A DNA stretch of 64,000 nucleotides, from the NCBI RefSeq assembly GCF_963676685.1, contig NC_092346.1, forward strand, positions 16,120,001 to 16,184,000. Direction: 5' to 3'. Positions 26,201 to 38,329 of this stretch are shown piece by piece (within the stretch, counting starts at the first letter, position 1; each line of letters begins with the position of its first letter). Position numbers and translations under genes: made by a program. The notes below the pieces were generated by a model. That model worked only from the letters and a program-made list of their open reading frames with translations, did not search any database and was not told the origin of the DNA. The stretch is from Mytilus edulis. Lineage: Eukaryota.

Positions 26201-27264
26201 CGAATTATTATTTGAATTTTTCACTGTCATTATTGATTAATAAAATCATTTTAATTTTTGTTTATTTCGTAGCTATTGCCTCCTTAAGAACCTTCACACA
26301 TCTTCATGTACGAAAATGTAGATACTGATAGATTGTCTTTAAGTGTATTAAATTATTAATACCTATTTAATTGTGTTATTCAAATACTAAACCAATTTCT
26401 TTTTGTGACCTGGAATTGCATTTAAAAATTCGTGTGACGTATTGACCTTACTGAATAGAGAAAACGAGTGTTGGCCTACATTGATCAAATTTGTAGATTG
26501 ATTCGTAATTATATTGTGTAGCTTTATATTTAAATTTCTCATTGAGTACAATAATGTTCAGGGATAGAGACATATAAGGTATGTTATTTTTTTACAATCT
26601 TTTTTCGATAAAGGAAATTCTGGAAAATTATCATTATATTTTTTCTGTTATTTTTAATTAAGTGAATACGATGGGTATACGCTATCAACAAACAACTTCT
26701 ATGTATAATGAACATGTCTATGTTGTACTATATACGTGAAATTATTTATGGGCTATTTTAACATCGAGATGACCGTGATGGCATTCAGATGTATTGCTAT
26801 CGCCTAGAATTGCACACGTAACTTTAGTTTTGGATTGTAATCGGTCTATAATAGATATAGGAAGATGTGGTGTGAGTGCCAATGAGACAACTATCCATCC
26901 AAATAACAATTTTAAAAAAGTAAACCATTATAGGTCAATGTTCGGCCTTCAGCACGCAGCCTTGGCTCACACCGAACAACAAGCTATAAAGGGCCCCAAA
27001 ATTACTAGTGTAAAACCATTCAAACGGGAAAACCAACGGTCTAATCTATATACTATTAGAATAAAAAAACGAGAAACGAGAAACACGTATAAATTACATA
27101 AACAAACGACAAATACTTTAAACATGATAAATACGCGGAAACTAACTAATGCAAACGAAAATCCCTTATTATCGTTTGCTATAAATACATCTCTTTAATG
27201 AATACAGATAAAAAATACTTTTGTTTAGAACCTAAATTAATCATATGACAATGTTTTATCGTTA

Positions 27265-27600
27265 GTCTAAACACCAACCCAACAATGTTAGATCTATAAA
27301 TTTGCTTTCGCAAATGTTTTGTTTTTCCCTCGCCGGGATTCGAACCCATGCTACTGAGATATCGTGACACCAAATCGCCTGCACTGTAACCGGCGGGCTA
27401 GACCACACGACCACCTGGGCTTCAGAAAATGAAGCTTTTGGTGGCCGGGTGTTACCTTTCCACGTCAGTTTTAATCTAGCGTCGTACTACAGTACATGAT
27501 ATATAAGGCATGAAGCTGTTATTTTTTACAGATCAGCTAAATCATCTATAGTAAAGGATCCTAGAAATTAATGTAAGATACAGTCACAGACATAATTATA
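27265..27600 (-). mobile_element. Truncated copy of the ~440-bp Pol III-box (tRNA-like) repeat unit
   Basis: Its reverse complement matches 30291-30627. It is cut just after TTTAGAC. Confidence 0.85.
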
Positions 27601-27608
27601 ACTATATA

Positions 27609-29014
27609 TGTAACACTCAAAAACCTGTCCTTCCCCCCAAACGTGTCCAAATCACGTCACTGAACTGTAAAACTTGTCTTGTTGCAAAAGGGCGCCAAAG
27701 CGTGTCATTTGTATAAACGCCCAAACGTATCCAATCCCCCAAACGTGTCCATATCAAGCGTAATTTGGTTATTGATATTTCATTAACGTATACTAATTTT
27801 ACCATTTCATTAAAATTAAAGATAAGCTACGTTAGTACTTTTTTAAACCGGCAGTATAAACTAAGTAAAAGTGGGGGCGACATTCCGGCTATGTCGTATG
27901 TAAATTGTAAGCAAATTAGTTAAATTGTATTATTACCTAATAAAGAGTATTGTACGGTTATCTGGTAAACTTTCCTTTCTCTGCGCATTAAAACATTTCT
28001 CTCTAAATATGCATGAAATACTGGCAACGGAACATTGCGCAATCAACAGTCTAAAATTAATTTAAACAGTAGAACTGCAAAAAACATTAAAACTTGTATG
28101 TTCTCTCTAAATATGCATGAAATACTTGCAACTGAACAATACGCAATCATTAGTTTAAAGTTAATTATTACAGTACAATTGTTAAAACATGAAAACTGGC
28201 AAAACTATTGTTCGCTCTTAATATGCACAAAGTACTTGCAACTGAACAATACGTAATCAACAGTCTAAAGTTTATTTATACAGTACAAATTAAATTTGCA
28301 ATTAAAACCGGGGTAAATCACATAACAATCATATTTATAAAAAAGAATCTATAAAACCAATGCATGACATATTTGGCACTGGACGTTATGTCTCTTTATC
28401 GTGTGTTTTTAGTGATGCTGGAAACCTTCAATTTATTAAAAAAAAAACAGATAACTAATTTATGATTTGATGAGCTTTTATAATACACACAAATTCAAAT
28501 GGAGAACCGTTGATAAAGTGAAAAAATGCTGCTGAAAGCCTGACGTAAAATAATTGGATAAATATAAAAGGCATCATCGGAGTTTATAAGTACAAATTAA
28601 TTTACAAAGTTAACGATTAATGCAACGCTAGAATTTTTCGTATGTTCGCTCTAAATGAGTATGAAATACTTGCAACTGGGCAATAAGCAATTTCAGTCAA
28701 AAGTTAAATCACAATTACAGATTAAATTTGGAATTATGTTAATCATTTAAAACCGGCATTGCACTAACTAATGCTAATAAATGACAACTTCATCACCTGT
28801 GTGCCCCATAATAAAATTGCCGTAAACGTTATCAGCGATTTCAATTTAGGAGATACATGTATTAGCGCTAACAGATGTGAGACGTGCTGGCGTGTTATAA
28901 TGGACACGTTATGGCGAATAACAATATTATCGGACACGTTTGGGGGTTTTGAAATCGGACACGTTTGGGGAGAATAGACACGTTTGGGGGAAGGACACGT
29001 TCGGGAGTGTTACA
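27609..29014. mobile_element. Non-autonomous TIR element in (TA)n with subterminal CCCCAAACGTGTCC repeats
   Basis: TGTAACACTC ... GAGTGTTACA termini flanked by TA, mirrored subterminal repeats, and an internal ~100-bp repeat (starts ~27997, 28100, 28210, 28643). Confidence 0.75.
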
Positions 29015-29025
29015 TATATATATAT

Positions 29026-29644
29026 GGTTCGAATCCCGGCGAGGGAAGAACAAACAATTTGCGAAAGCAAACAGATCTAACATTGTTGGGTTAATGTTTA
29101 GACGAGTTGTATATACATAATGTACACAGCCATGTATCACCATCACTGCTGGTGATCCGATGGATAAATCTGTTGTAAAGTTGTCACTGGCTCAGACGTA
29201 CTTATAAATATAATTATTTTCTGTGACTGTATCTTACATTAATTTTTAGGATCTTTTTCTATAGATAATTTAGCTGATCTGTAAGAATAACATCTTCTTG
29301 CCTTATATATCATGTACTGTAGTGCGACGCTAGATTAAATCTGACGTGGAAATGTAACACCCGGTCACCGAAAGCTTCATTTTTTTTATGAAGCCCAGGT
29401 GGTCGTGTGGTCTAGCGGGACGGCTACAGTGCAGGCGATTTGGTGTCACGATATCTCAGTAGCATGTGTTCGAATCCCAGCGAGGGAAGAACCAAAAATT
29501 TGCGAAAGCAAATTTACAGATCTAACATTGTTGGGTTGATGTTTAGACGAGTTGCATATACATAATGTACACAGCATGTATCACCATCACTGCTGGTAAT
29601 CCAATGGATAAATCTGTTGTAGAGTTGTCACTGGCTCAGACGTA

Positions 29645-29647
<3 letters not shown>
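29026..29647 (+). mobile_element. 1.4-mer head-to-tail tandem of the ~440-bp Pol III-box unit, flanked by (TA)n
   Basis: B-box GTTCGAATCCC at 29027 and 29468 gives a period of 441. Tail-to-head junction CAGACGTACTTATAAATATAATTAT at ~29200. Confidence 0.85.

Positions 29648-29694
<47 letters not shown>
29648..29694. repeat. (TA)n microsatellite (others at 30162-30185, 30727-30758, 35282-35299)
   Basis: Directly visible. Confidence 0.95.
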
Positions 29695-29696
<2 letters not shown>

Positions 29697-30724
29697 TACG
29701 TCTGAGTCAGTGACAACCCTACAACATATGTATCCATCGGATCGCCATCAATGATGGTGATACATGGCTGTGTACATAATGTATATAGTACGCCGCTAGA
29801 TTAAAACTGCATGGAAAGGTAACACATGCCCACCGAAAGCTCTTTTTTTGAGAGCCCAGGTGGTCGTGTGGTCTAGCGGGACGGCTGCAGTGCAGGCGAT
29901 TTGGTGTCACGATATCACAGTAGCATGGGTTCGAATCCCGGCGAGGGAAGAACCAAAAATTTGCGAAAGCAAATTTACAGATCTAACATTGTTGGGTTGA
30001 TGTTTAGACGAGTTATATATGAGGGAAGAACCAAAAATTTGCGAAAGCAAATTTACAGATCTAACATTGTTGGGTTGATGTTTAGACGAGTTGTAGAACC
30101 AAAAATTTGCGAAAGCAAATTTACAGATCTAACATTGTTGGGTTGATGTTTAGACGAGTTGTATATATATATATATATATATATAACTCTTCTAAACATC
30201 AACCCAACAATGTTAGATCTGTAAATTTGCTTTCGCAAATTTTTGGTTCTTCCCTCGCCTACAAATTAATGTAAGATACAGTCACAGAAAATAATTATAT
30301 TTCTGTGACTGTATCTTACATTAATTTGTAGAATCCTTTACTATAGATAATTTAGCTGATCTGTATCAATAACATCTTCATGCCTTATATATCATGTACT
30401 GTAGTACGCCGCTAGATTAAAACTGACGTGGAAAGGTAACACATGCCCACCGAAAGCTCTTTTTTTTGAGAGCCCAGGTGGTCGTGTGGTCTAGCGGGAC
30501 GGCTGCAGTGCAGGCGATTTGGTGTCACGATATCACAGTAGCATGGGTTCGAATCCCGGCGAGGGAAGAACCAAAAATTTGCGAAAGCAAATTTACAGAT
30601 CTAACATTGTTGGGTTGATGTTTAGACGAGTTGTATATACATTATGTACACAGCCATGTATCACCATCATTGATGGCGATCCGATGGATACATCTGTTGT
30701 AGGGTTGTCACTGACTCAGACGTA

Positions 30725-30727
<3 letters not shown>
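29695..30727 (+). mobile_element. Rearranged array of the same unit: inverted tail, partial copy, two re-primed sub-repeats, inverted pieces and a full copy (30291-30727)
   Basis: 29695-29787 is an inverted tail; 29786-30013 is a + copy; 30021-30093 and 30094-30161 are repeats; 30186-30296 is inverted; 30291-30727 is the full unit. Confidence 0.85.
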
Positions 30728-30760
<33 letters not shown>

Positions 30761-30924
30761 GTCTAAAAATAGCAACAATCAACATTCAATCTAATTAAGC
30801 GTGGATCAGTTTGTGAAAATAAACTGATACAGTTACTGAATTAAAATTATATAAATGTCTAAGAATATAACTAAAACACACTAATTGATACATTAAAAAG
30901 TTCTATTAGATGTTAAATAGAAAT

Positions 30925-30963
30925 ACGCAATATTTCGCTAAACAAATTAGCTTCATCAGGCGT
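30925..30963 (-). ncRNA. Minimal type I hammerhead ribozyme (PLE-associated)
   Basis: Reverse-complement copy of 35172-35210. Confidence 0.75.
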
Positions 30964-31179
30964 GTGCATCTCTCAAGGTGAAATCGGATGCATGACAGAA
31001 AAATATTTTTGTAGCTTAATCTATACAAGATTTGAGGGATGGGTGTAACATATTAATTCGGTCATAAAATATGTTTGTAGCTACAACTACATGAAGTTGG
31101 AATAAAAGTTTAACACATTTATAGATGTTCGATTAATTGTATGAATTTTTATAAATTAATTTGTATGATTTCAAGATAA

Positions 31180-32843
31180 CTATGGTTTTGATTTGCTTTG
31201 AAATCTTTTTTCGTCTCTCTCATTGAGTCCATCAGGTTCAAGAGTTCGTAACTGGTGCATCCAAAATCTCTCTCTTTTTTGTCTTCCTTGTGTATCCCAA
31301 TTTTGATTTTTCTCAATGATTTGAAATGTGATGTTTTCAAAATCATGTCCTGCTCTTAAAAGGTGTCTTGTAATTGGGCAGTTCCTTTCTTTTGTATAAA
31401 ATGACCGATGGTTATTTAGTCGGATGTTAAATGGGGTTTCTGTTTCACCAACATATTGTAATTTGCAAGTTCCACACGTTAGAACATAAATGCAATTTTG
31501 CGTTTTGCAATTTGATGTTATAAATATGTTGTAATTTTTCTTTGTGACTGTGCTGATGAACTGGGTTTCTATATTTGCGACTTTGCAGCACTTACAATTG
31601 CCCCTTCCGCATTGTTTATAACCTCCGATTGTTGATATCTCCCGTTTAGATACTTTGGATGATACTAGAATATCTTTGAGGTTTTTTGGTCTGCGGTAAG
31701 CCATAACGGGAGGTGATGGAAAAATCTCGCTTAAGGAAGGATCATTTTCAATAAGACGCCAGTGTTTGTGGACAATTGATGAAATATTTGTCAGATGAGG
31801 ATGAAAGCTAACCACAAACGGGATTTTATTTGTCTGGGCCGTCTTTTCTTTGTATTCAAGTAGGTTTGTTCGTTCTTTTTCGTTTGCTTTTCCGAAAGCT
31901 TCTGAAATACTTTTGTTCTTATAACCTCTTGATTTGAGTTGCTGTCTGAGTTGCCCTAAACGATGGTTTAACTTTGATTCCGATGAAAAAATCCGTTTTA
32001 ACCTGATGGCTTGGCTGTACGGAATGCTCCGGGAGCAGTGTTTCGGGTGACAACTCTTCGGAGAGAGAAATTGGTGTTTATCAGTTTTTTTGGTGTGAAG
32101 GTCTGTTGTCATGACTCCGTTTTCTAAAGTTATGGTGGTGTCGAGAAACGCAATTTTCTCATTTGAAACTTCAGATGTGAACTTGATCGATTGATGAAAG
32201 TTGTTACAGAAATCGAGAAATTCTTGCAGGCGTTCTGCAGTTTCGTTCCATTTGATGTCGATGTCATCAATATAACGGAGCCAAGACAAGGGTTTGTATG
32301 GTACATTCGAAAGGATGCGTTCTTCGAGACTCCCCATGAAAATGTTGGCAAAAGAAGGTGCCATTTTGGTTCCCATACTGGTACCGTCAACCTGCAAGTA
32401 GTGCTGGTCGTTGAATACAAAATTGTTGTTTTCAAGCACTAGTCTCAGCAACTGAACCAGACAGTCTGTTGGGGGATGTTTATCCTTACGATTGTTCCAT
32501 ACCTGTTCACAAGCGACTATTCCTTCATTTTTGGGAATATTTGTGTACAAAGAAAACACATCCATCGATACCAAAATTGTGTTGTTTGGTAAGGGGTTTA
32601 ATGAATCCATTTTCTTCAAATAATCTGTAGTATCTTGAATGTAAGATGGCATTGTTCTAACATGTGGTCTGAGATGGTAATCCACGAATTCAGATATTTT
32701 TTCGGTTGGATGGCCATTTGCAGATACTATCGGTCTTCCCGGAATCCCTTCTTTATGGAGTTTTGGGAGCAAGTAAAATCGACCGGCTGTGCAGGTTTCA
32801 TCAGGTCGTAGATAGTCGTACGTGTCGTCATCAATATGTTTTT
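31180..32843 (-). CDS. Penelope-like RT + GIY-YIG endonuclease, N-terminally truncated
   Basis: LPKLHK, GRPIVS, GTSMG, RYIDDI, IPYSQAIR, CGRGNCKCC and CIYVLTCGTCKLQYVGET motifs. ORF 31180..32772. Confidence 0.92.
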
Positions 32844-34955
32844 CGCCTAAAAGAACATTTTAATAGGCAACACAAAAAAACCTTACAAGAAGCCGGAATG
32901 AATGATTCGGAATATGAGAGTGATAAAGAGGACAAGTGCATCCCAAGATTTAAAAAGAAAAGCGAATGGAATCCACCAAGGAGTAAGAACGACAATTTAG
33001 AATCCTTTATATCATCAATTAAAACTGAAGTAAAATCATCAGTCAGTGGCAAACGTTTAAGGAATCTCTCTGAACAAGAAAGCCAGGCCATAAATAATTT
33101 AAAAAGCCGTGATGATATTGTTATTAAACAAGCAGACAAAGGAAGTGCAGTTGTAGTGATCAACAAAACCGACTACATTGAAGAAGGGAATCGTCAGCTT
33201 ATAAATACAAAATTTTACAAACATTTAGAAAGTGATCCTACAAAAGAAATAAGTAAACAAATTAATGAGGTCCTTTCAGACATGAACAGCAAAAAACATA
33301 TTGATGACGACACGTACGACTATCTACGACCTGATGAAACCTGCACAGCCGGTCGATTTTACTTGCTCCCAAAACTCCATAAAGAAGGGATTCCGGGAAG
33401 ACCGATAGTATCTGCAAATGGCCATCCAACCGAAAAAATATCTGAATTCGTGGATTACCATCTCAGACCACATGTTAGAACAATGCCATCTTACATTCAA
33501 GATACTACAGATTATTTGAAGAAAATGGATTCATTAAACCCCTTACCAAACAACACAATTTTGGTATCGATGGATGTGTCTTCTTTGTACACAAATATTC
33601 CCAAAAATGAAGGAATAGTCGCTTGTGAACAGGTATGGAACAATCGTAAGGATAAACATCCCCCAACAGACTGTCTGGTTCAGTTGCTGAGACTAGTGCT
33701 TGAAAACAACAATTTTGTATTCAACGACCAGCACTACTTGCGGGTTGACGGTACCAGTATGGGAACCAAAATGGCACCTTCTTTTGCCAACATTTTCATG
33801 GGGAGTCTCGAAGAACGCATCCTTTCGAATGTACCATACAAACCCTTGTCTTGGCTCCGTTATATTGATGACATCGACATCAAATGGAACGAAACTGCAG
33901 AACGCCTGCAAGAATTTCTCGATTTCTGTAACAACTTTCATCAATCGATCAAGTTCACATCTGAAGTTTCAAATGAGAAAATTGCGTTTCTCGACACCAC
34001 CATAACTTTAGAAAACGGAGTCATGACAACAGACCTTCACACCAAAAAAACTGATAAACACCAATTTCTCTCTCCGAAGAGTTGTCACCCGAAACACTGC
34101 TCCCGGAGCATTCCATACAGCCAAGCCATCAGGTTAAAATGGATTCGTTCATCGGAATCAAAGTTAAACCATCGTTTAGGGCAACTCAGACAGCAACTCA
34201 AATCAAGAGGTTATAAGAACAAAAGTATTTCAGAAGCTTTCGGAAAAGCAAACGAAAAAGAACGAACAAACCTACTTGAATACAAAGAAAAGACGGCCCA
34301 GACAAATAAAATCCCGTTTGTGGTTAGCTTTCATCCTCATCTGACAAATATTTCATCAATTGTCCACAAACACTGGCGTCTTATTGAAAATGATCCTTCC
34401 TTAAGCGAGATTTTTCCATCACCTCCCGTTATGGCTTACCGCAGACCAAAAAACCTCAAAGATATTCTAGTATCATCCAAAGTATCTAAACGGGAGATAT
34501 CAACAATCGGAGGTTATAAACAATGCGGAAGGGGCAATTGTAAGTGCTGCAAAGTCGCCAATATAGAAACCCAGTTCATCAGCACAGTCACAAAGAAAAA
34601 TTACAACATATTTATAACATCAAATTGCAAAACGCAAAATTGCATTTATGTTCTAACGTGTGGAACTTGCAAATTACAATATGTTGGTGAAACAGAAACC
34701 CCATTTAACATCCGACTAAATAACCATCGGTCATTTTATACAAAAGAAAGGAACTGCCCAATTACAAGACACCTCTTAAGAGCAGGACATGATTTTGAAA
34801 ACATCACATTTCAAATCATTGAGAAAAATCAAAATTGGGATACACAAGGAAGACAAAAAAGAGAGAGATTTTGGATGCACCAGTTACGAACTCTTGAACC
34901 TGATGGACTCAATGAGAGAGACGAAAAAAGATTTCAAAGCAAATCAAAACCATAG
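32844..34955 (+). CDS. Penelope-like RT + GIY-YIG endonuclease (uninterrupted, native N-terminus missing)
   Basis: RLKEHF, IVIKQADKGSAVVV, LPKLHK, RYIDDI, the Cys-rich linker and GIY-YIG-type CIY..YVGET..R..NH..E..GLN. The first 46 aa of ORF 32706..34955 come from the inverted arm. Confidence 0.93.
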   Translation, partial: RLKEHFNRQHKKTLQEAGMNDSEYESDKEDKCIPRFKKKSEWNPPRSKNDNLESFISSIKTEVKSSVSGKRLRNLSEQESQAINNLKSRDDIVIKQADKGSAVVVINKTDYIEEGNRQLINTKFYKHLESDPTKEISKQINEVLSDMNSKKHIDDDTYDYLRPDETCTAGRFYLLPKLHKEGIPGRPIVSANGHPTEKISEFVDYHLRPHVRTMPSYIQDTTDYLKKMDSLNPLPNNTILVSMDVSSLYTNIPKNEGIVACEQVWNNRKDKHPPTDCLVQLLRLVLENNNFVFNDQHYLRVDGTSMGTKMAPSFANIFMGSLEERILSNVPYKPLSWLRYIDDIDIKWNETAERLQEFLDFCNNFHQSIKFTSEVSNEKIAFLDTTITLENGVMTTDLHTKKTDKHQFLSPKSCHPKHCSRSIPYSQAIRLKWIRSSESKLNHRLGQLRQQLKSRGYKNKSISEAFGKANEKERTNLLEYKEKTAQTNKIPFVVSFHPHLTNISSIVHKHWRLIENDPSLSEIFPSPPVMAYRRPKNLKDILVSSKVSKREISTIGGYKQCGRGNCKCCKVANIETQFISTVTKKNYNIFITSNCKTQNCIYVLTCGTCKLQYVGETETPFNIRLNNHRSFYTKERNCPITRHLLRAGHDFENITFQIIEKNQNWDTQGRQKRERFWMHQLRTLEPDGLNERDEKRFQSKSKP

Positions 34956-35171
34956 TTATCTTGAAATCATACAAATTAATTTATAAAAATTCATACAATT
35001 AATCGAACATCTATAAATGTGTTAAACTTTTATTCCAACTTCATGTAGTTGTAGCTACAAACATATTTTATGACCGAATTAATATGTTACACCCATCCCT
35101 CAAATCTTGTATAGATTAAGCTACAAAAATATTTTTCTGTCATGCATCCGATTTCACCTTGAGAGATGCAC

Positions 35172-35210
35172 ACGCCTGATGAAGCTAATTTGTTTAGCGA
35201 AATATTGCGT
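35172..35210 (+). ncRNA. Minimal type I hammerhead ribozyme (PLE-associated)
   Basis: ACGC-CTGATGA-A-GCTAA(TTTGT)TTAGC-GAAA-TA-TT-GCGT. Stem I is ACGC/GCGT, stem II is GCTAA/TTAGC, and stem III is a minimal palindrome (AATATT). Confidence 0.75.
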
Positions 35211-36054
35211 ATTTCTATTTAACATCTAATAGAACTTTTTAATGTATCAATTAGTGTGTTTTAGTTATATTCTTAGACATTTATATATATATATATATAA
35301 GTAAACAATCGTGATCATTGATAATATATATGCACACGTACCGAAAAATTGTGTTAAAGCATGCGGAATAATATCTCAAGAAGGTTTTGCGACAATGCCG
35401 GCAAGGACCGATAACTCTGTAATTGTTTTTGCGGGGAAATATGAATGCCTACTCATGTCCAATCTTTTAGAAAATCGAATTTTTACAGAAGAGTGTCCAC
35501 CATGCACTTGCACTGCAATATTATTAGAAAAGTAGAACAGAATGATTTACAAATTGATGAACATATTATATACATGTTACTGTTTTATTAATATAATATA
35601 TAACAACAAACTTGTGAAACTAATTTGTATCACTACAATATAATAGTTATTATGGTGAAGTTGAATTTCCTGGCATTGATTCATCATCCACGCACGAACT
35701 TGTCTCAGAAAAAAATATATCTGTGTACATTAACCTCAGTTTCAGGTATTGAGTTGATTTTTTTTCAGTGACAAGTGCCTTTGACCATCCACAAGAACTT
35801 GCGGTCATTCAAAATTTACTACAATAAAAACAATATTCCAATACCATATTACTGTGTTTTTTTTATTGGTAAACTTTTAAAATGAGTTTTGTATTAAGAA
35901 TTGATAGGTTTATACGCATCGCATCTGAATTTTTTGGTTCGATAAACAACATCATTGTAAAGTTGGGATGTTCTATTACGTTGTAATCAATTTTCTACAT
36001 GTGCTGTATAATTGTGACACAATGTTGAGTATTCTGTCTTATAAATGTTTCAGA

Positions 36055-37148: not shown

Positions 37149-38329
37149 TTATAAACTTAATTACGTGCTGTAGTGTTCTTTTATTTGTCTTTGTGAATTA
37201 TCACTTTTAATGATTATTCCATTCTATGAAATATCCCTTTGGCGCTTTTTTTGTCATGATGTTATTTGCAAGATATGCTCCTTTTTTGAATACCGGTCTG
37301 TCATTTTTGCTTTAGTCTCTCCTGATATTTGTGTTTGTTTTGATAGTGATTAGGAATATATTTTAACATCTTTGACTGCTGTACCTCTATTTATTACATT
37401 TTTACCTATTATGTCTTTGTTTTGTTCACATATTGTTGTCAATATAATGGATTTCCCGTTTGAATGGTTTAACACTAGCAATTTTGGGGCCCTTTATAGC
37501 TTTTTGTTCGATGTGAGCCAAGGCTCCGTGTTGAAGGCCGTACATTGACCTCTAATGGTTTACTTTAATAAATTGTTATTTTGATGGAGAGTTGTCTCAT
37601 TAGCACTCACACCACATCTTCCTATATCTATTTATGTGACTGTCATACTGAGACTGAGAGGTTTAGCAAGCAATAAAACCAGATGTATCAATAATTTGTA
37701 TAGGGTTGACAATTGTTTTCTATTCGTTTGATTGGTTTATGCTTTTGAATTTGAATTTTGATAAGGGACGTTCCGTTTCAGATTTTCTTTGGAGATGGGA
37801 AGTTTTGTGTTTGAACGGGGCAAATGTCAATTTTTACAGAAAAATCTATTTTTGGTCTATTTTTTTATGTATAAATTACTGCTTTGGAATAAGACTCGAC
37901 ACAAATAGTTCTATCTAACTTTTTATCATGTTTTTTAATCAACTTCAAAGATTTCTTATCTTTAAAAATTTAACTTAAAAAAATCGGTACAAAAAATGAA
38001 TGTACTTATACAATTCTGATTGGATAACTATTATCCAGATTACAAACAATAACACAATTATCAATCTTTTGATATAAATGATATGAAAATTTCAGCTGTC
38101 AATAATTCTTTATTTTCGTTTTTACTTTTCAAAACATATACCTATTAATTTAATCATGTTACATGTACTCTTCAAGCTCCAGATTTGTATCGGTTGATCC
38201 GTATAATCTGTGTTTAATTTTTTTTTTATAATTTGTAATGTTAATTTGATTCATGTTCTACAGTTTTTAAAGGATAAAGCATTGACTGATTTTTTTTATT
38301 GATACAATTTGGTATGCATCTGGTAATAA

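What the first reader, a model, noticed from the sequence alone, without database searches (positions are those of the whole stretch)
27265..30760. Candidate non-autonomous partner of a Penelope-like element: ~440-bp non-coding Pol III-box unit that inserts into (TA)n like a PLE
Seen: a non-coding unit with A-box (TGGTCGTGTGG) and B-box (GGTTCGAATCC) occurs as a partial+full head-to-tail tandem (period 441 bp), as copies preceded by an inverted piece of themselves (29695-29787, 30186-30296), and as short re-primed repeats. Nearly all copies end in (TA)n, none has a poly-A tail or TSD, and the array abuts a (TA)n-terminated PLE that shows the same inversion pattern. Established: partial tandems and 5' inversions are typical PLE insertion structures, whereas ordinary tRNA SINEs are LINE-mobilised monomers. 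Inference: this is a SINE/retrozyme-like RNA parasite copied by the PLE RT-endonuclease, possibly from a multimeric or circular RNA template. I cannot tell whether it has already been catalogued.
Basis: partly seen in the sequence, partly recalled or inferred. Interest (0 to 1): 0.85.

Follow-up and report, generated by a model that had tools for sequence, protein, structure and literature searches.

The report
tRNA-bearing tandem retroelement riding Penelope-like machinery
A 441-base non-coding repeat with a tRNA-derived promoter-like piece has spread to thousands of (TA)n sites in this mussel-type genome as head-to-tail and head-to-head arrays, the insertion signature of Penelope-like retrotransposons, so it is most likely a non-coding parasite of those elements.

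Summary
The unit is a 441-442 bp non-coding repeat. It has at least 834 candidate places for the young subfamily (97-100% identical) and 3582 for an older one.

In a census of 59 complete arrays:
- 36 are longer than one unit (arrays running off their locus reach at least 7.6).
- 5' starts are scattered along the unit.
- 47 end at one of two fixed points, both TA-rich spots of the unit; 39 of those run straight into (TA)n.
- Head-to-head inverted junctions are common. There are no poly-A tails.

This is the published insertion anatomy of Penelope-like elements (PLEs).

The neighbouring PLE encodes RT plus a C-terminal GIY-YIG nuclease, has a CX4CxxC linker, and belongs to a young family with 99-100% copies. 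It shows the same inversions and ends in TTAGAC-N5-(TA)n. It shares no other sequence with the unit.

The tRNA-like part has an invariant B box and an A box, but no cloverleaf. A hammerhead look-alike upstream of a T-run is non-canonical.

PLE-dependent tandem elements are already published (retrozymes, Chlamys MRC1), so this is a new variant of a known kind. The scan has met this family before on other DNA of this genome.

The parts
27265..27600 (-). Older (91%) unit copy, unit positions 100-435. It lies head-to-head with the plus-strand copies across a TA spacer that is now split by a MITE-like insertion.
29026..29109 (+). 5'-truncated unit starting at the B box (unit 354-441), joined head-to-tail to the next unit.
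29110..29554 (+). Full unit (1-441), 93% identical to the young consensus.
29556..29646 (+). Partial next unit (about 1-103) ending at the second 3' end, ...GACGTACTTA.
29647..29694 (.). (TA)24 shared by two opposed 3' ends.
29685..29787 (-). Inverted 3' piece of the unit (1-103) joined head-to-head to the next plus copy.
   Evidence: (I5, I9)
29788..30014 (+). 5'-truncated unit (about 213-440) carrying the T-run hairpin, A box at 29869-29879 and B box at 29928-29938.
30021..30161 (+). Two short reiterated 3'-terminal pieces (unit 369-441 and 375-441), each ending at ...GACGAGTTG.
30162..30186 (.). (TA)n between opposed 3' ends.
30185..30301 (-). Inverted pieces (unit 366-440, then 98-141) forming the head-to-head junction with the next copy.
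30287..30736 (+). Young (98-99%) copy, unit 97-441 plus 1-103. It carries a hammerhead look-alike (CTGACGT at 30423-30429, GAAA at 30452-30455), T8 at 30460-30467 inside the hairpin GCTCT/AGAGC, A box at 30487-30497 and B box at 30546-30556.
30727..30758 (.). (TA)16 at the 3' end of the array.
30739..30771 (-). 33-nt fragment of the PLE 3' tail abutting the same (TA)n.
30848..32846 (-). Inverted 5'-truncated copy of the PLE, identical to the forward copy. The 530-aa ORF contains RVT_1 and GIY-YIG.
32847..35300 (+). Forward PLE copy. [quoted passage not shown] A minimal hammerhead candidate lies at about 35165-35215. The 3' end is ...TTCTTAGACATTTA followed by (TA)n.

Best explanation
The 441-nt unit is a non-coding, non-autonomous retrotransposon. 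It is copied into (TA)n microsatellites by the reverse transcriptase and GIY-YIG nuclease of a Penelope-like element. The most plausible donor is the young Neptune-type family next to it.

Proposed mechanism:
1. The nicked (TA)n target primes cDNA synthesis by annealing to one of two UA-rich tracts inside the unit RNA. One follows ...UUUAGACGAGUUG; the other follows ...CAGACGUACUUA.
2. Synthesis then runs through the same unit-length sequence one to at least eight times.
3. It stops at a random point, often after a strand switch that leaves an inverted 5' piece.

The unit carries a tRNA-derived A/B-box module. It is preceded by a hairpin whose loop is a T-run, so in an array each unit could give one unit-length Pol III transcript whose ends pair with each other.

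Shown: the insertion anatomy, the copy numbers, the two 3' ends, the (TA)n association, the co-active PLE, and the strongly self-paired RNA.

Inferred: trans-mobilisation by a PLE, which PLE it is, Pol III transcription, and a circular or re-used template.
For: **Genome-wide anatomy**
- 834 candidate places for the young subfamily and 3582 for the older one, mostly tandem with period 441-442.
- Census of 59 complete arrays: 36 exceed one unit; 36 end at ...GACGAGTTG and 11 at ...GACGTACTTA; 39 of these 47 are followed directly by (TA)3 or more; 5' starts are spread over the whole unit; 19 have (TA)n at the 5' flank and many others are head-to-head junctions.
- Both 3' ends coincide with TA-rich tracts of the unit.
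- Short reiterated 3' pieces occur here and in L039.

**Arrays born as repeats of one template**
- Within arrays about 90% of variable sites are singletons.
- Several arrays carry private variants shared by all their units.
- No common upstream sequence and no ORF over 107 aa lies 5' of the long arrays.

**Match to published PLE structure and targets**
- PLE structure is 5' truncation, partial tandems and an inverted 5' copy; (TA)n is a known target (PMC8557442).
- Non-autonomous PLE dependents with multicopy head-to-tail insertions are published in the same paper.

**Candidate partner**
- RVT_1 plus GIY-YIG and a CX4CxxC linker.
- 1073 candidate places, many at 99-100% identity, with recurrent head-to-head pairs.
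- 3' end TTAGAC-N5-(TA)n, against TTAGAC-N6 and TCAGAC-N6 in the unit.
- YAGAC occurs within 14 nt of other (TA)n flanks in 7 of 78 cases, against a 1.7% background.
- PLE fragments abut unit arrays in L019/L030, L016, L034 and L046.

**RNA features**
- B box is exact in 104 of 110 distinct units and most of its columns are invariant in the 19-unit alignment.
- The T-run is at least 4 nt in 85 of 88 young units.
- The hairpin around the T-run shows compensatory change, GCTCT/AGAGC to GCTTCA/TGAAGC.
- MFE z-score is -4.4 on the plus strand against -3.3 on the minus strand, and the plus strand is more stable in 19 of 19 units.
Against: - No RNA or read evidence could be obtained, so transcription, strand, ends and circularity are untested here.
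- The unit shares no significant sequence with the neighbouring PLE beyond a 6-nt motif next to (TA)n, whereas published non-autonomous PLEs usually share the 3' end.
- The full 5' region of the PLE could not be fetched.
- The tRNA-like part is not a foldable tRNA. ARAGORN is negative even at 90% thresholds, and Rfam tRNA gives no hit at E up to 10. The A/B boxes are therefore promoter-like by sequence only.
- Covariation support for the rod-like fold is weak: 2 doubly compensated pairs of 104, and a covariation term of +1.85.
- Arrays made from read-through transcripts of older arrays would look the same as arrays made from circles.
- My array sample is biased towards long, young copies.
Confidence: 0.65

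Rival explanations
1. It is a true retrozyme. The CUGAcGu...GAAA-AGCU motif just upstream of the T-run would be a working, non-canonical or dimeric minimal hammerhead. It would cut multimeric transcripts to unit length, the units would be ligated to circles, and PLE RT would copy the circles. The tRNA-like part would be a passenger or a promoter.
For: - The motif sits where a type I hammerhead would cut, immediately 5' of the tRNA-like head.
- GAAAGCT, which contains a palindromic AGCU like the helix III cap of minimal PLE hammerheads, is present in 86 of 88 young and 18 of 22 older units.
- Some subfamilies read CTGACGA, a canonical CUGANGA.
- AAAA upstream of CUGA could pair with the T-run as helix I.
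- Mytilus has abundant hammerhead retrozymes expressed as circRNA (PMC7229834).
- The unit RNA is highly self-paired.
Against: - The successful young subfamily has U at core position 9: 84 of 88 units read CTGACGT.
- Only 5 of 110 distinct units match CTGANGA...GAAA.
- In the consensus fold the CUGA is paired to the tRNA-like head inside a long stem.
- Rfam finds no ribozyme, even in a dimer covering the junction. Rfam also misses the PLE's own minimal motif, so this counts for little.
- There is no visible resemblance, by eye only, to the published Mytilus retrozyme clone.
Confidence: 0.15
2. It is a dispersed short satellite spread at the DNA level. The routes would be extrachromosomal circles re-integrating at fragile (TA)n, or capture by a DNA transposon or Helitron. 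No reverse transcription would be involved.
For: - Tandem units, small dispersed arrays and an association with unstable (TA)n tracts.
- Bivalve satellites are often dispersed and tied to mobile elements (literature listed).
- No RNA evidence was obtained here.
Against: - One end of the arrays is fixed and the other is variable, a polarity expected from 3'-primed cDNA synthesis and not from circle integration.
- Head-to-head junctions and reiterated short 3' pieces copy the anatomy of the coding PLE next door.
- Within-array variation is star-like, not the partial sharing expected from repeated unequal exchange.
- No terminal inverted repeats or Helitron ends flank the arrays.
Confidence: 0.1
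3. It is an ordinary tRNA-derived SINE mobilised by a LINE, and it later became tandemised locally.
For: A and B boxes are present with tRNA-like spacing. Bivalves have many tRNA SINEs (PMC10294476).
Against: - The tRNA-like part lies inside the inserted unit, not at its 5' end.
- Arrays start anywhere in the unit.
- There is no poly-A or LINE-type tail.
- 36 of 59 arrays are multimers, and all canonical ends are at (TA)n.
Confidence: 0.04

Closest known systems
Metazoan non-LTR retrozymes (Cervera and de la Pena 2020, PMC7229834; Li, Clavereau and Pollet 2026, bioRxiv 10.64898/2026.07.22.740005)
   Same: - Non-coding tandem units of 150-450 bp, from dimers to multimers.
- Low G+C (40.5% here).
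- Highly self-paired RNA.
- Co-existence with PLEs, which are proposed to mobilise them.
   Different: - No canonical type I hammerhead; only a look-alike with U at core position 9.
- Carries a tRNA-derived A/B-box module and a T-run.
- No visible resemblance to the published 350-390 bp Mytilus retrozyme clone (by eye only).
- circRNA was not tested.
Non-autonomous Chlamys PLE dependents such as MRC1 of Chlamydomonas (Craig et al. 2021, PMC8557442)
   Same: - Non-coding.
- Pseudo-LTRs and multicopy head-to-tail insertions.
- 5' truncation.
- Microsatellite targets.
- Young and active together with autonomous PLEs.
   Different: - Those share their 3' end with the autonomous family; here only TTAGAC plus (TA)n is shared.
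- The host is an animal.
- The putative partner has a C-terminal nuclease.
- A tRNA-like module is present.
tRNA-derived SINEs
   Same: Small, non-coding, with A and B boxes of a Pol III type 2 promoter, and dependent on an RT encoded elsewhere.
   Different: - The head is not at the 5' end of insertions and does not fold as a tRNA.
- No LINE-type tail or poly-A.
- Insertions are tandem multimers with inverted 5' pieces.
Neptune-type Penelope-like elements (for the neighbouring coding element)
   Same: RT plus C-terminal GIY-YIG, a CX2-5CxxC linker, a (TA)n target, an inverted 5'-truncated copy, and a minimal hammerhead-like motif near the 3' end.
   Different: Clade placement was not tested by phylogeny. 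The hammerhead candidate is not detected by Rfam.

Membership tests
Metazoan non-LTR retrozyme | Short (150-450 bp) non-coding units in tandem, from dimers to multimers, with low G+C | tested here: met
   441-442 bp units. 36 of 59 arrays are longer than one unit, and arrays running off their locus reach at least 7.6. G+C is 40.5%.
Metazoan non-LTR retrozyme | A type I hammerhead ribozyme in every unit | tested here: not met
   - No Rfam ribozyme hit in a monomer or a dimer.
- The strict CTGANGA...GAAA pattern is absent from the finding region and present in only 5 of 110 distinct units.
- The look-alike has U at position 9 and is paired in the consensus fold.
Metazoan non-LTR retrozyme | Expressed as unit-length circular RNA | not testable with these tools
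An earlier agent's note (s1-834038) reports head-to-tail RNA, which I did not verify.
Non-autonomous PLE dependent | PLE insertion anatomy: 5' truncation, partial or multicopy tandems, an inverted 5'-truncated copy, and a microsatellite target | tested here: met
   compared with the description in PMC8557442.
Non-autonomous PLE dependent | 3'-end sequence shared with an autonomous PLE family | tested here: inconclusive
   Only T(T/C)AGAC-N5-6-(TA)n is shared. The local alignment score is below the shuffle mean. The YAGAC motif is enriched next to other (TA)n tracts. Other PLE families of the genome were not compared.
Non-autonomous PLE dependent | No coding capacity of its own | tested here: met
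   No meaningful ORF lies in the unit, and no ORF over 107 aa lies upstream of the long arrays.
tRNA-derived SINE | 5' head that is recognisably tRNA-related, with A and B boxes | tested here: inconclusive
   The B box is exact and the A box matches 9 of 11 positions of the consensus as I recall it. No cloverleaf is found by ARAGORN at default or 90% thresholds, and there is no Rfam tRNA hit. The module is internal to the inserted units.
tRNA-derived SINE | Monomeric insertions with a LINE-derived or A-rich tail and target-site duplications | tested here: not met
   The insertions are multimers, have (TA)n ends and no poly-A. Target-site duplications cannot be read inside (TA)n.
Classical satellite DNA | Long homogenised arrays at few loci, evolving by unequal exchange | tested here: not met
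   There are hundreds to thousands of short arrays across the 14 large contigs. Within-array variation is star-like.

The most novel reading that the evidence does not exclude
This would be the first Pol III-type (tRNA-promoter) partner of a Penelope-like element: a retrozyme that has replaced its hammerhead.

- In an array, each unit would be transcribed from its A/B boxes and stopped at the next T-run. Alternatively it would be cut out by RNase P at the tRNA-like head.
- This would give a unit-length RNA whose paired ends favour circularisation or end-to-end template jumping.
- PLE RT primed from (TA)n would then roll around it to make the multimers.
Probability: 0.3. Interest if true: 0.8.

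Novelty: new variant of a known kind. Interest (0 to 1): 0.6.

Why it matters
PLEs are the least understood major class of retrotransposons. Their tandem and inverted insertion products, and their microsatellite targeting, have no established mechanism.

This family offers a small, very abundant and recently active non-coding substrate with two discrete initiation sites and a clean polarity. That makes it a natural reporter for PLE reverse transcription.

If the tRNA-like module really drives or processes the RNA, two things follow:
- Retrozyme-like parasites do not need a ribozyme.
- SINE-type Pol III elements can exploit PLEs as well as LINEs.

The family also matters for annotation. Pipelines that discard tandem repeats, or that require a 5' tRNA head and target-site duplications (as in PMC10294476), would probably miss it or mislabel it as satellite.

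Tried and rejected
- **Rfam.** Scans of 10 kb, of the monomer and of a canonical dimer gave only hairpin-artefact miRNA hits, with no ribozyme and no tRNA. Rfam also fails on the PLE's own minimal hammerhead candidate, so its silence is weak evidence.
- **ARAGORN.** Nothing at default or 90% thresholds; noise everywhere at 70-80%.
- **Source tRNA.** A pattern search of the genome for a tRNA resembling the head, using my recollection of tRNA-Glu, returned only a unit variant. The source tRNA is unidentified.
- **Unit against the PLE.** Smith-Waterman alignment against the PLE 3' UTR and the whole PLE scored no better than shuffles. The unit is therefore not a deletion derivative of the part of this PLE seen here.
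- **Arrays as the 3' repeat region of a longer autonomous element.** Rejected: there is no shared upstream sequence or ORF.
- **Read evidence.** Expression, RNA ends, circular junctions and long-read support for the local assembly are untested.
- **More genome sequence.** The full-length PLE 5' region and an unbiased copy census could not be obtained.
- **Literature.** Three 20-21-nt words of the unit occur in no searchable paper. Repbase and Dfam could not be queried, so I cannot say the family is uncatalogued.
- **5' starts.** A mild excess just after the T-run (8 of 59 at unit positions 277-299, about 3 expected) is post hoc and only a lead.
Full report
**Setting.** The window is G000:C3:16120001-16184000 of a 1.37-Gb assembly with 14 large contigs. 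Other notes of this scan call it a mussel genome, which I did not verify. The sequence is AT-rich and eukaryotic in style.

**What is at 27265-30760.** Reading the sequence, TRF, the repeat finder and a local BLAST with a canonical unit agree on the layout. I phase the unit so that it ends at ...GTTTAGACGAGTTG (position 441).
- 27265-27600: an older minus-strand copy (unit 100-435, 91% identical).
- 27606-29020: an unrelated MITE-like element with about 43-nt inverted ends.
- 29026-29646: a plus-strand run of partial, full and partial units (354-441, 1-441, 1 to about 103).
- 29647-29694: (TA)24.
- 29685-29787: an inverted 3' piece (unit 1-103), joined head-to-head to the next item.
- 29788-30014: a 5'-truncated plus copy.
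- 30021-30161: two short reiterated 3' pieces (369-441 and 375-441).
- About 30162-30186: a (TA) tract.
- 30185-30301: inverted pieces.
- 30287-30736: a young copy (97-441 plus 1-103).
- 30727-30758: (TA)16.

The B box and the A-box-like word occur only in these copies and far above chance.

**The neighbour.** From 30848 to 35300 lies a PLE made of a forward copy preceded by an inverted 5'-truncated copy. The arms are 1999 nt and 100% complementary.
- The protein has CGRGNCKCC (CX4CxxC) just before the nuclease. Craig et al. describe this linker for Neptune/Nematis and Naiad elements and link it tentatively to (TA)n targeting.
- The family is young. It has 1073 candidate places, many at 99-100% identity, and many form the same head-to-head pairs.
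- A CTGATGA...GAAA motif at 35176-35202 can be drawn as a minimal PLE-type hammerhead. That drawing rests on my knowledge of the type. Rfam does not call it.

**Genome-wide behaviour of the unit.** A search of the assembly gave 834 candidate places for the young form, with scored matches at 97-100% identity and mostly spaced 442 bp apart. An older subfamily gave 3582 candidate places, also tandem.

I fetched 16 ten-kb loci and used the 3.4-kb loci returned by the searches. From these I compiled 59 arrays that are complete at both ends.
- Length: 23 are shorter than one unit, 13 span 1-2 units, 17 span 2-4 units and 6 span at least 4. Arrays running off their locus reach at least 7.6 units.
- 3' ends: 36 end at ...GACGAGTTG and 11 at ...GACGTACTTA. 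Of these 47, 39 run directly into (TA)3 or more.
- 5' starts are scattered over the whole unit.
- 5' flanks: 19 are (TA)n. Many of the rest are head-to-head junctions with an inverted copy.

Both 3' ends lie exactly where the unit itself has a TA-rich tract: TATATACAT after position 441 and TATGAATATAAT after position 103. The simplest reading is that the nicked (TA)n target anneals to these tracts and primes cDNA synthesis inside a longer template.

Copies are mostly multimers, there is no LINE-type tail, and the tie to (TA)n is strong. My sample is biased towards long young copies, because the search ranks by score.

**How the arrays arise.** I compared 108 full units from 35 arrays.
- Within-array divergence (median 0.7%) is half the between-array value of 1.35%.
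- About 90% of within-array variable sites are singletons.
- Several arrays carry private variants present in all their units.

Arrays therefore look as if they were born as repeats of one unit-length sequence and then mutated independently. They do not look as if they grew by repeated unequal exchange. This fits rolling reverse transcription on a circle or repeated re-use of one template. It does not exclude copying a read-through transcript of a homogeneous parent array.

The 5' flanks of the long arrays share nothing with each other and hold no ORF over 107 aa. The arrays are thus not the 3' repeat region of a longer coding element.

**The RNA-level features.** Nineteen non-redundant units (mean column identity 91%, alignment A1) show several things.
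- Most columns of the B box are invariant, and the A-box region is conserved.
- The 3' motif TTTAGACGAGTT is nearly invariant.
- The most variable stretch is the hairpin whose loop is the T-run.

That hairpin changes from GCTCT/AGAGC to GCTTCA/TGAAGC with compensation. Otherwise covariation is weak: 2 doubly compensated pairs of 104, and a covariation term of +1.85.

The unit RNA is strongly self-paired. The z-score is -4.4 for the plus strand and -3.3 for the minus strand. The plus strand is the more stable in 19 of 19 units.

When the unit is phased from just after the T-run, its two ends pair with each other.

The tRNA-like part is not a tRNA by ARAGORN or Rfam. It keeps a T-arm, part of an acceptor stem and the two boxes, so I call it tRNA-derived with moderate confidence.

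A T-run of at least 6 in 83 of 88 young units would stop Pol III. If Pol III is the polymerase, transcripts cannot exceed one unit, and multimeric cDNA would then need a circle or template jumping. This chain is inference.

**The hammerhead question.** Just upstream of the T-run the unit reads CUGAcGu, a stem, GAAA and AGCU.
- Some subfamilies have the canonical CUGAcGA, but only 5 of 110 distinct units match the strict pattern.
- The successful young subfamily has U at core position 9.
- In the consensus fold the CUGA is paired with the tRNA-like head.

I treat the motif as a look-alike or a relic, not as a demonstrated ribozyme. To the eye the published Mytilus retrozyme clone bears no resemblance to the unit; it was not aligned.

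**Which PLE.** The unit and the neighbouring PLE share a target, an insertion anatomy and recent activity. They also share T(T/C)AGAC five to six bases before the (TA)n. They share no other sequence.

Another PLE family seen next to an array (L034) lacks the motif. YAGAC is five-fold enriched next to other (TA)n tracts in my loci: 7 of 78, against a 1.7% background. This hints at a recognition or initiation motif used by one PLE lineage and its dependents.

PLE fragments abut unit arrays in several loci. That is expected if both use (TA)n and each insertion brings new (TA)n with it. Partner identity is plausible, at about 0.45, and not shown.

**Comparison with what is known.**
- PLE structure and (TA)n bias: Craig et al. 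2021.
- Non-autonomous PLE dependents with multicopy head-to-tail insertions: same paper.
- Metazoan retrozymes as tandem hammerhead units probably mobilised by PLEs, with abundant circRNA in Mytilus: Cervera and de la Pena 2020.
- Retrozymes related to PLE pseudo-LTRs: Li et al. 2026.
- A curation guide already calls such elements a possible new type of SINE.

What I did not find in the searchable literature is a PLE-type tandem element built around a tRNA-derived Pol III module without a working hammerhead. Repbase and Dfam were out of reach. Hence my rating: a new variant of a known kind.

**Earlier notes of this scan.** The same family was noted on other DNA of this genome (s1-834038, s1-834036, s1-834675, s1-838099). 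Two follow-ups reached conclusions that match mine, and one reports head-to-tail RNA, which I could not check. Two notes on this window (s1-835508 and s1-835509) concern the 3' motif and the rod-like fold. I tested both.

**Limits.** There are no reads. No further genome sequence could be fetched. There is no eukaryotic repeat database. The census is biased.

Noticed in passing
window 27606-29020: A MITE-like element with about 43-nt imperfect inverted ends (GTAACACTC...). It has subterminal 19-nt GGACACGTTTGGGG repeats and internal 104-110-bp tandem repeats. It is inserted into the TA spacer between two head-to-head unit copies.
   Followed up: partly
window 35165-35215 (twin at 30920-30970, minus strand): CTGATGA-stem-GAAA followed by AUAU in the PLE 3' region. 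It can be drawn as a minimal dimeric PLE-type hammerhead and resembles the published Mytilus retrozyme ribozyme in layout. Rfam does not detect it.
   Followed up: partly
window 26983-27035 and 37448-37500: A 53-nt inverted repeat (94% complementary) brackets the whole unit-plus-PLE cluster. It is probably two copies of another dispersed repeat in opposite orientation.
   Followed up: no
window 30739-30771 and 30772-30847: A 33-nt fragment of the PLE 3' tail abuts the unit's (TA)16. About 75 bp of unassigned sequence follow before the inverted PLE copy begins. This may be the 30-40-bp 'tail' extension described for PLE insertions, or an aborted insertion.
   Followed up: partly
L033:6790-6890: A G/C-rich homopolymer-like filler (cccctcccccctcccccc) lies at a head-to-head junction between two unit arrays, unlike the clean junctions elsewhere.
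   Followed up: no
L046:8645-8700: A unit array's (TA)n is followed directly by GGGTTA repeats. This may be an interstitial telomere-like tract next to an insertion.
   Followed up: no
L033, L034, L036, L039 (flanks of (TA)n tracts): Other unidentified sequences end in T(T/C/A)AGAC(T/G)-N0-5-(TA)n. This suggests further element families share the same 3' signature.
   Followed up: partly
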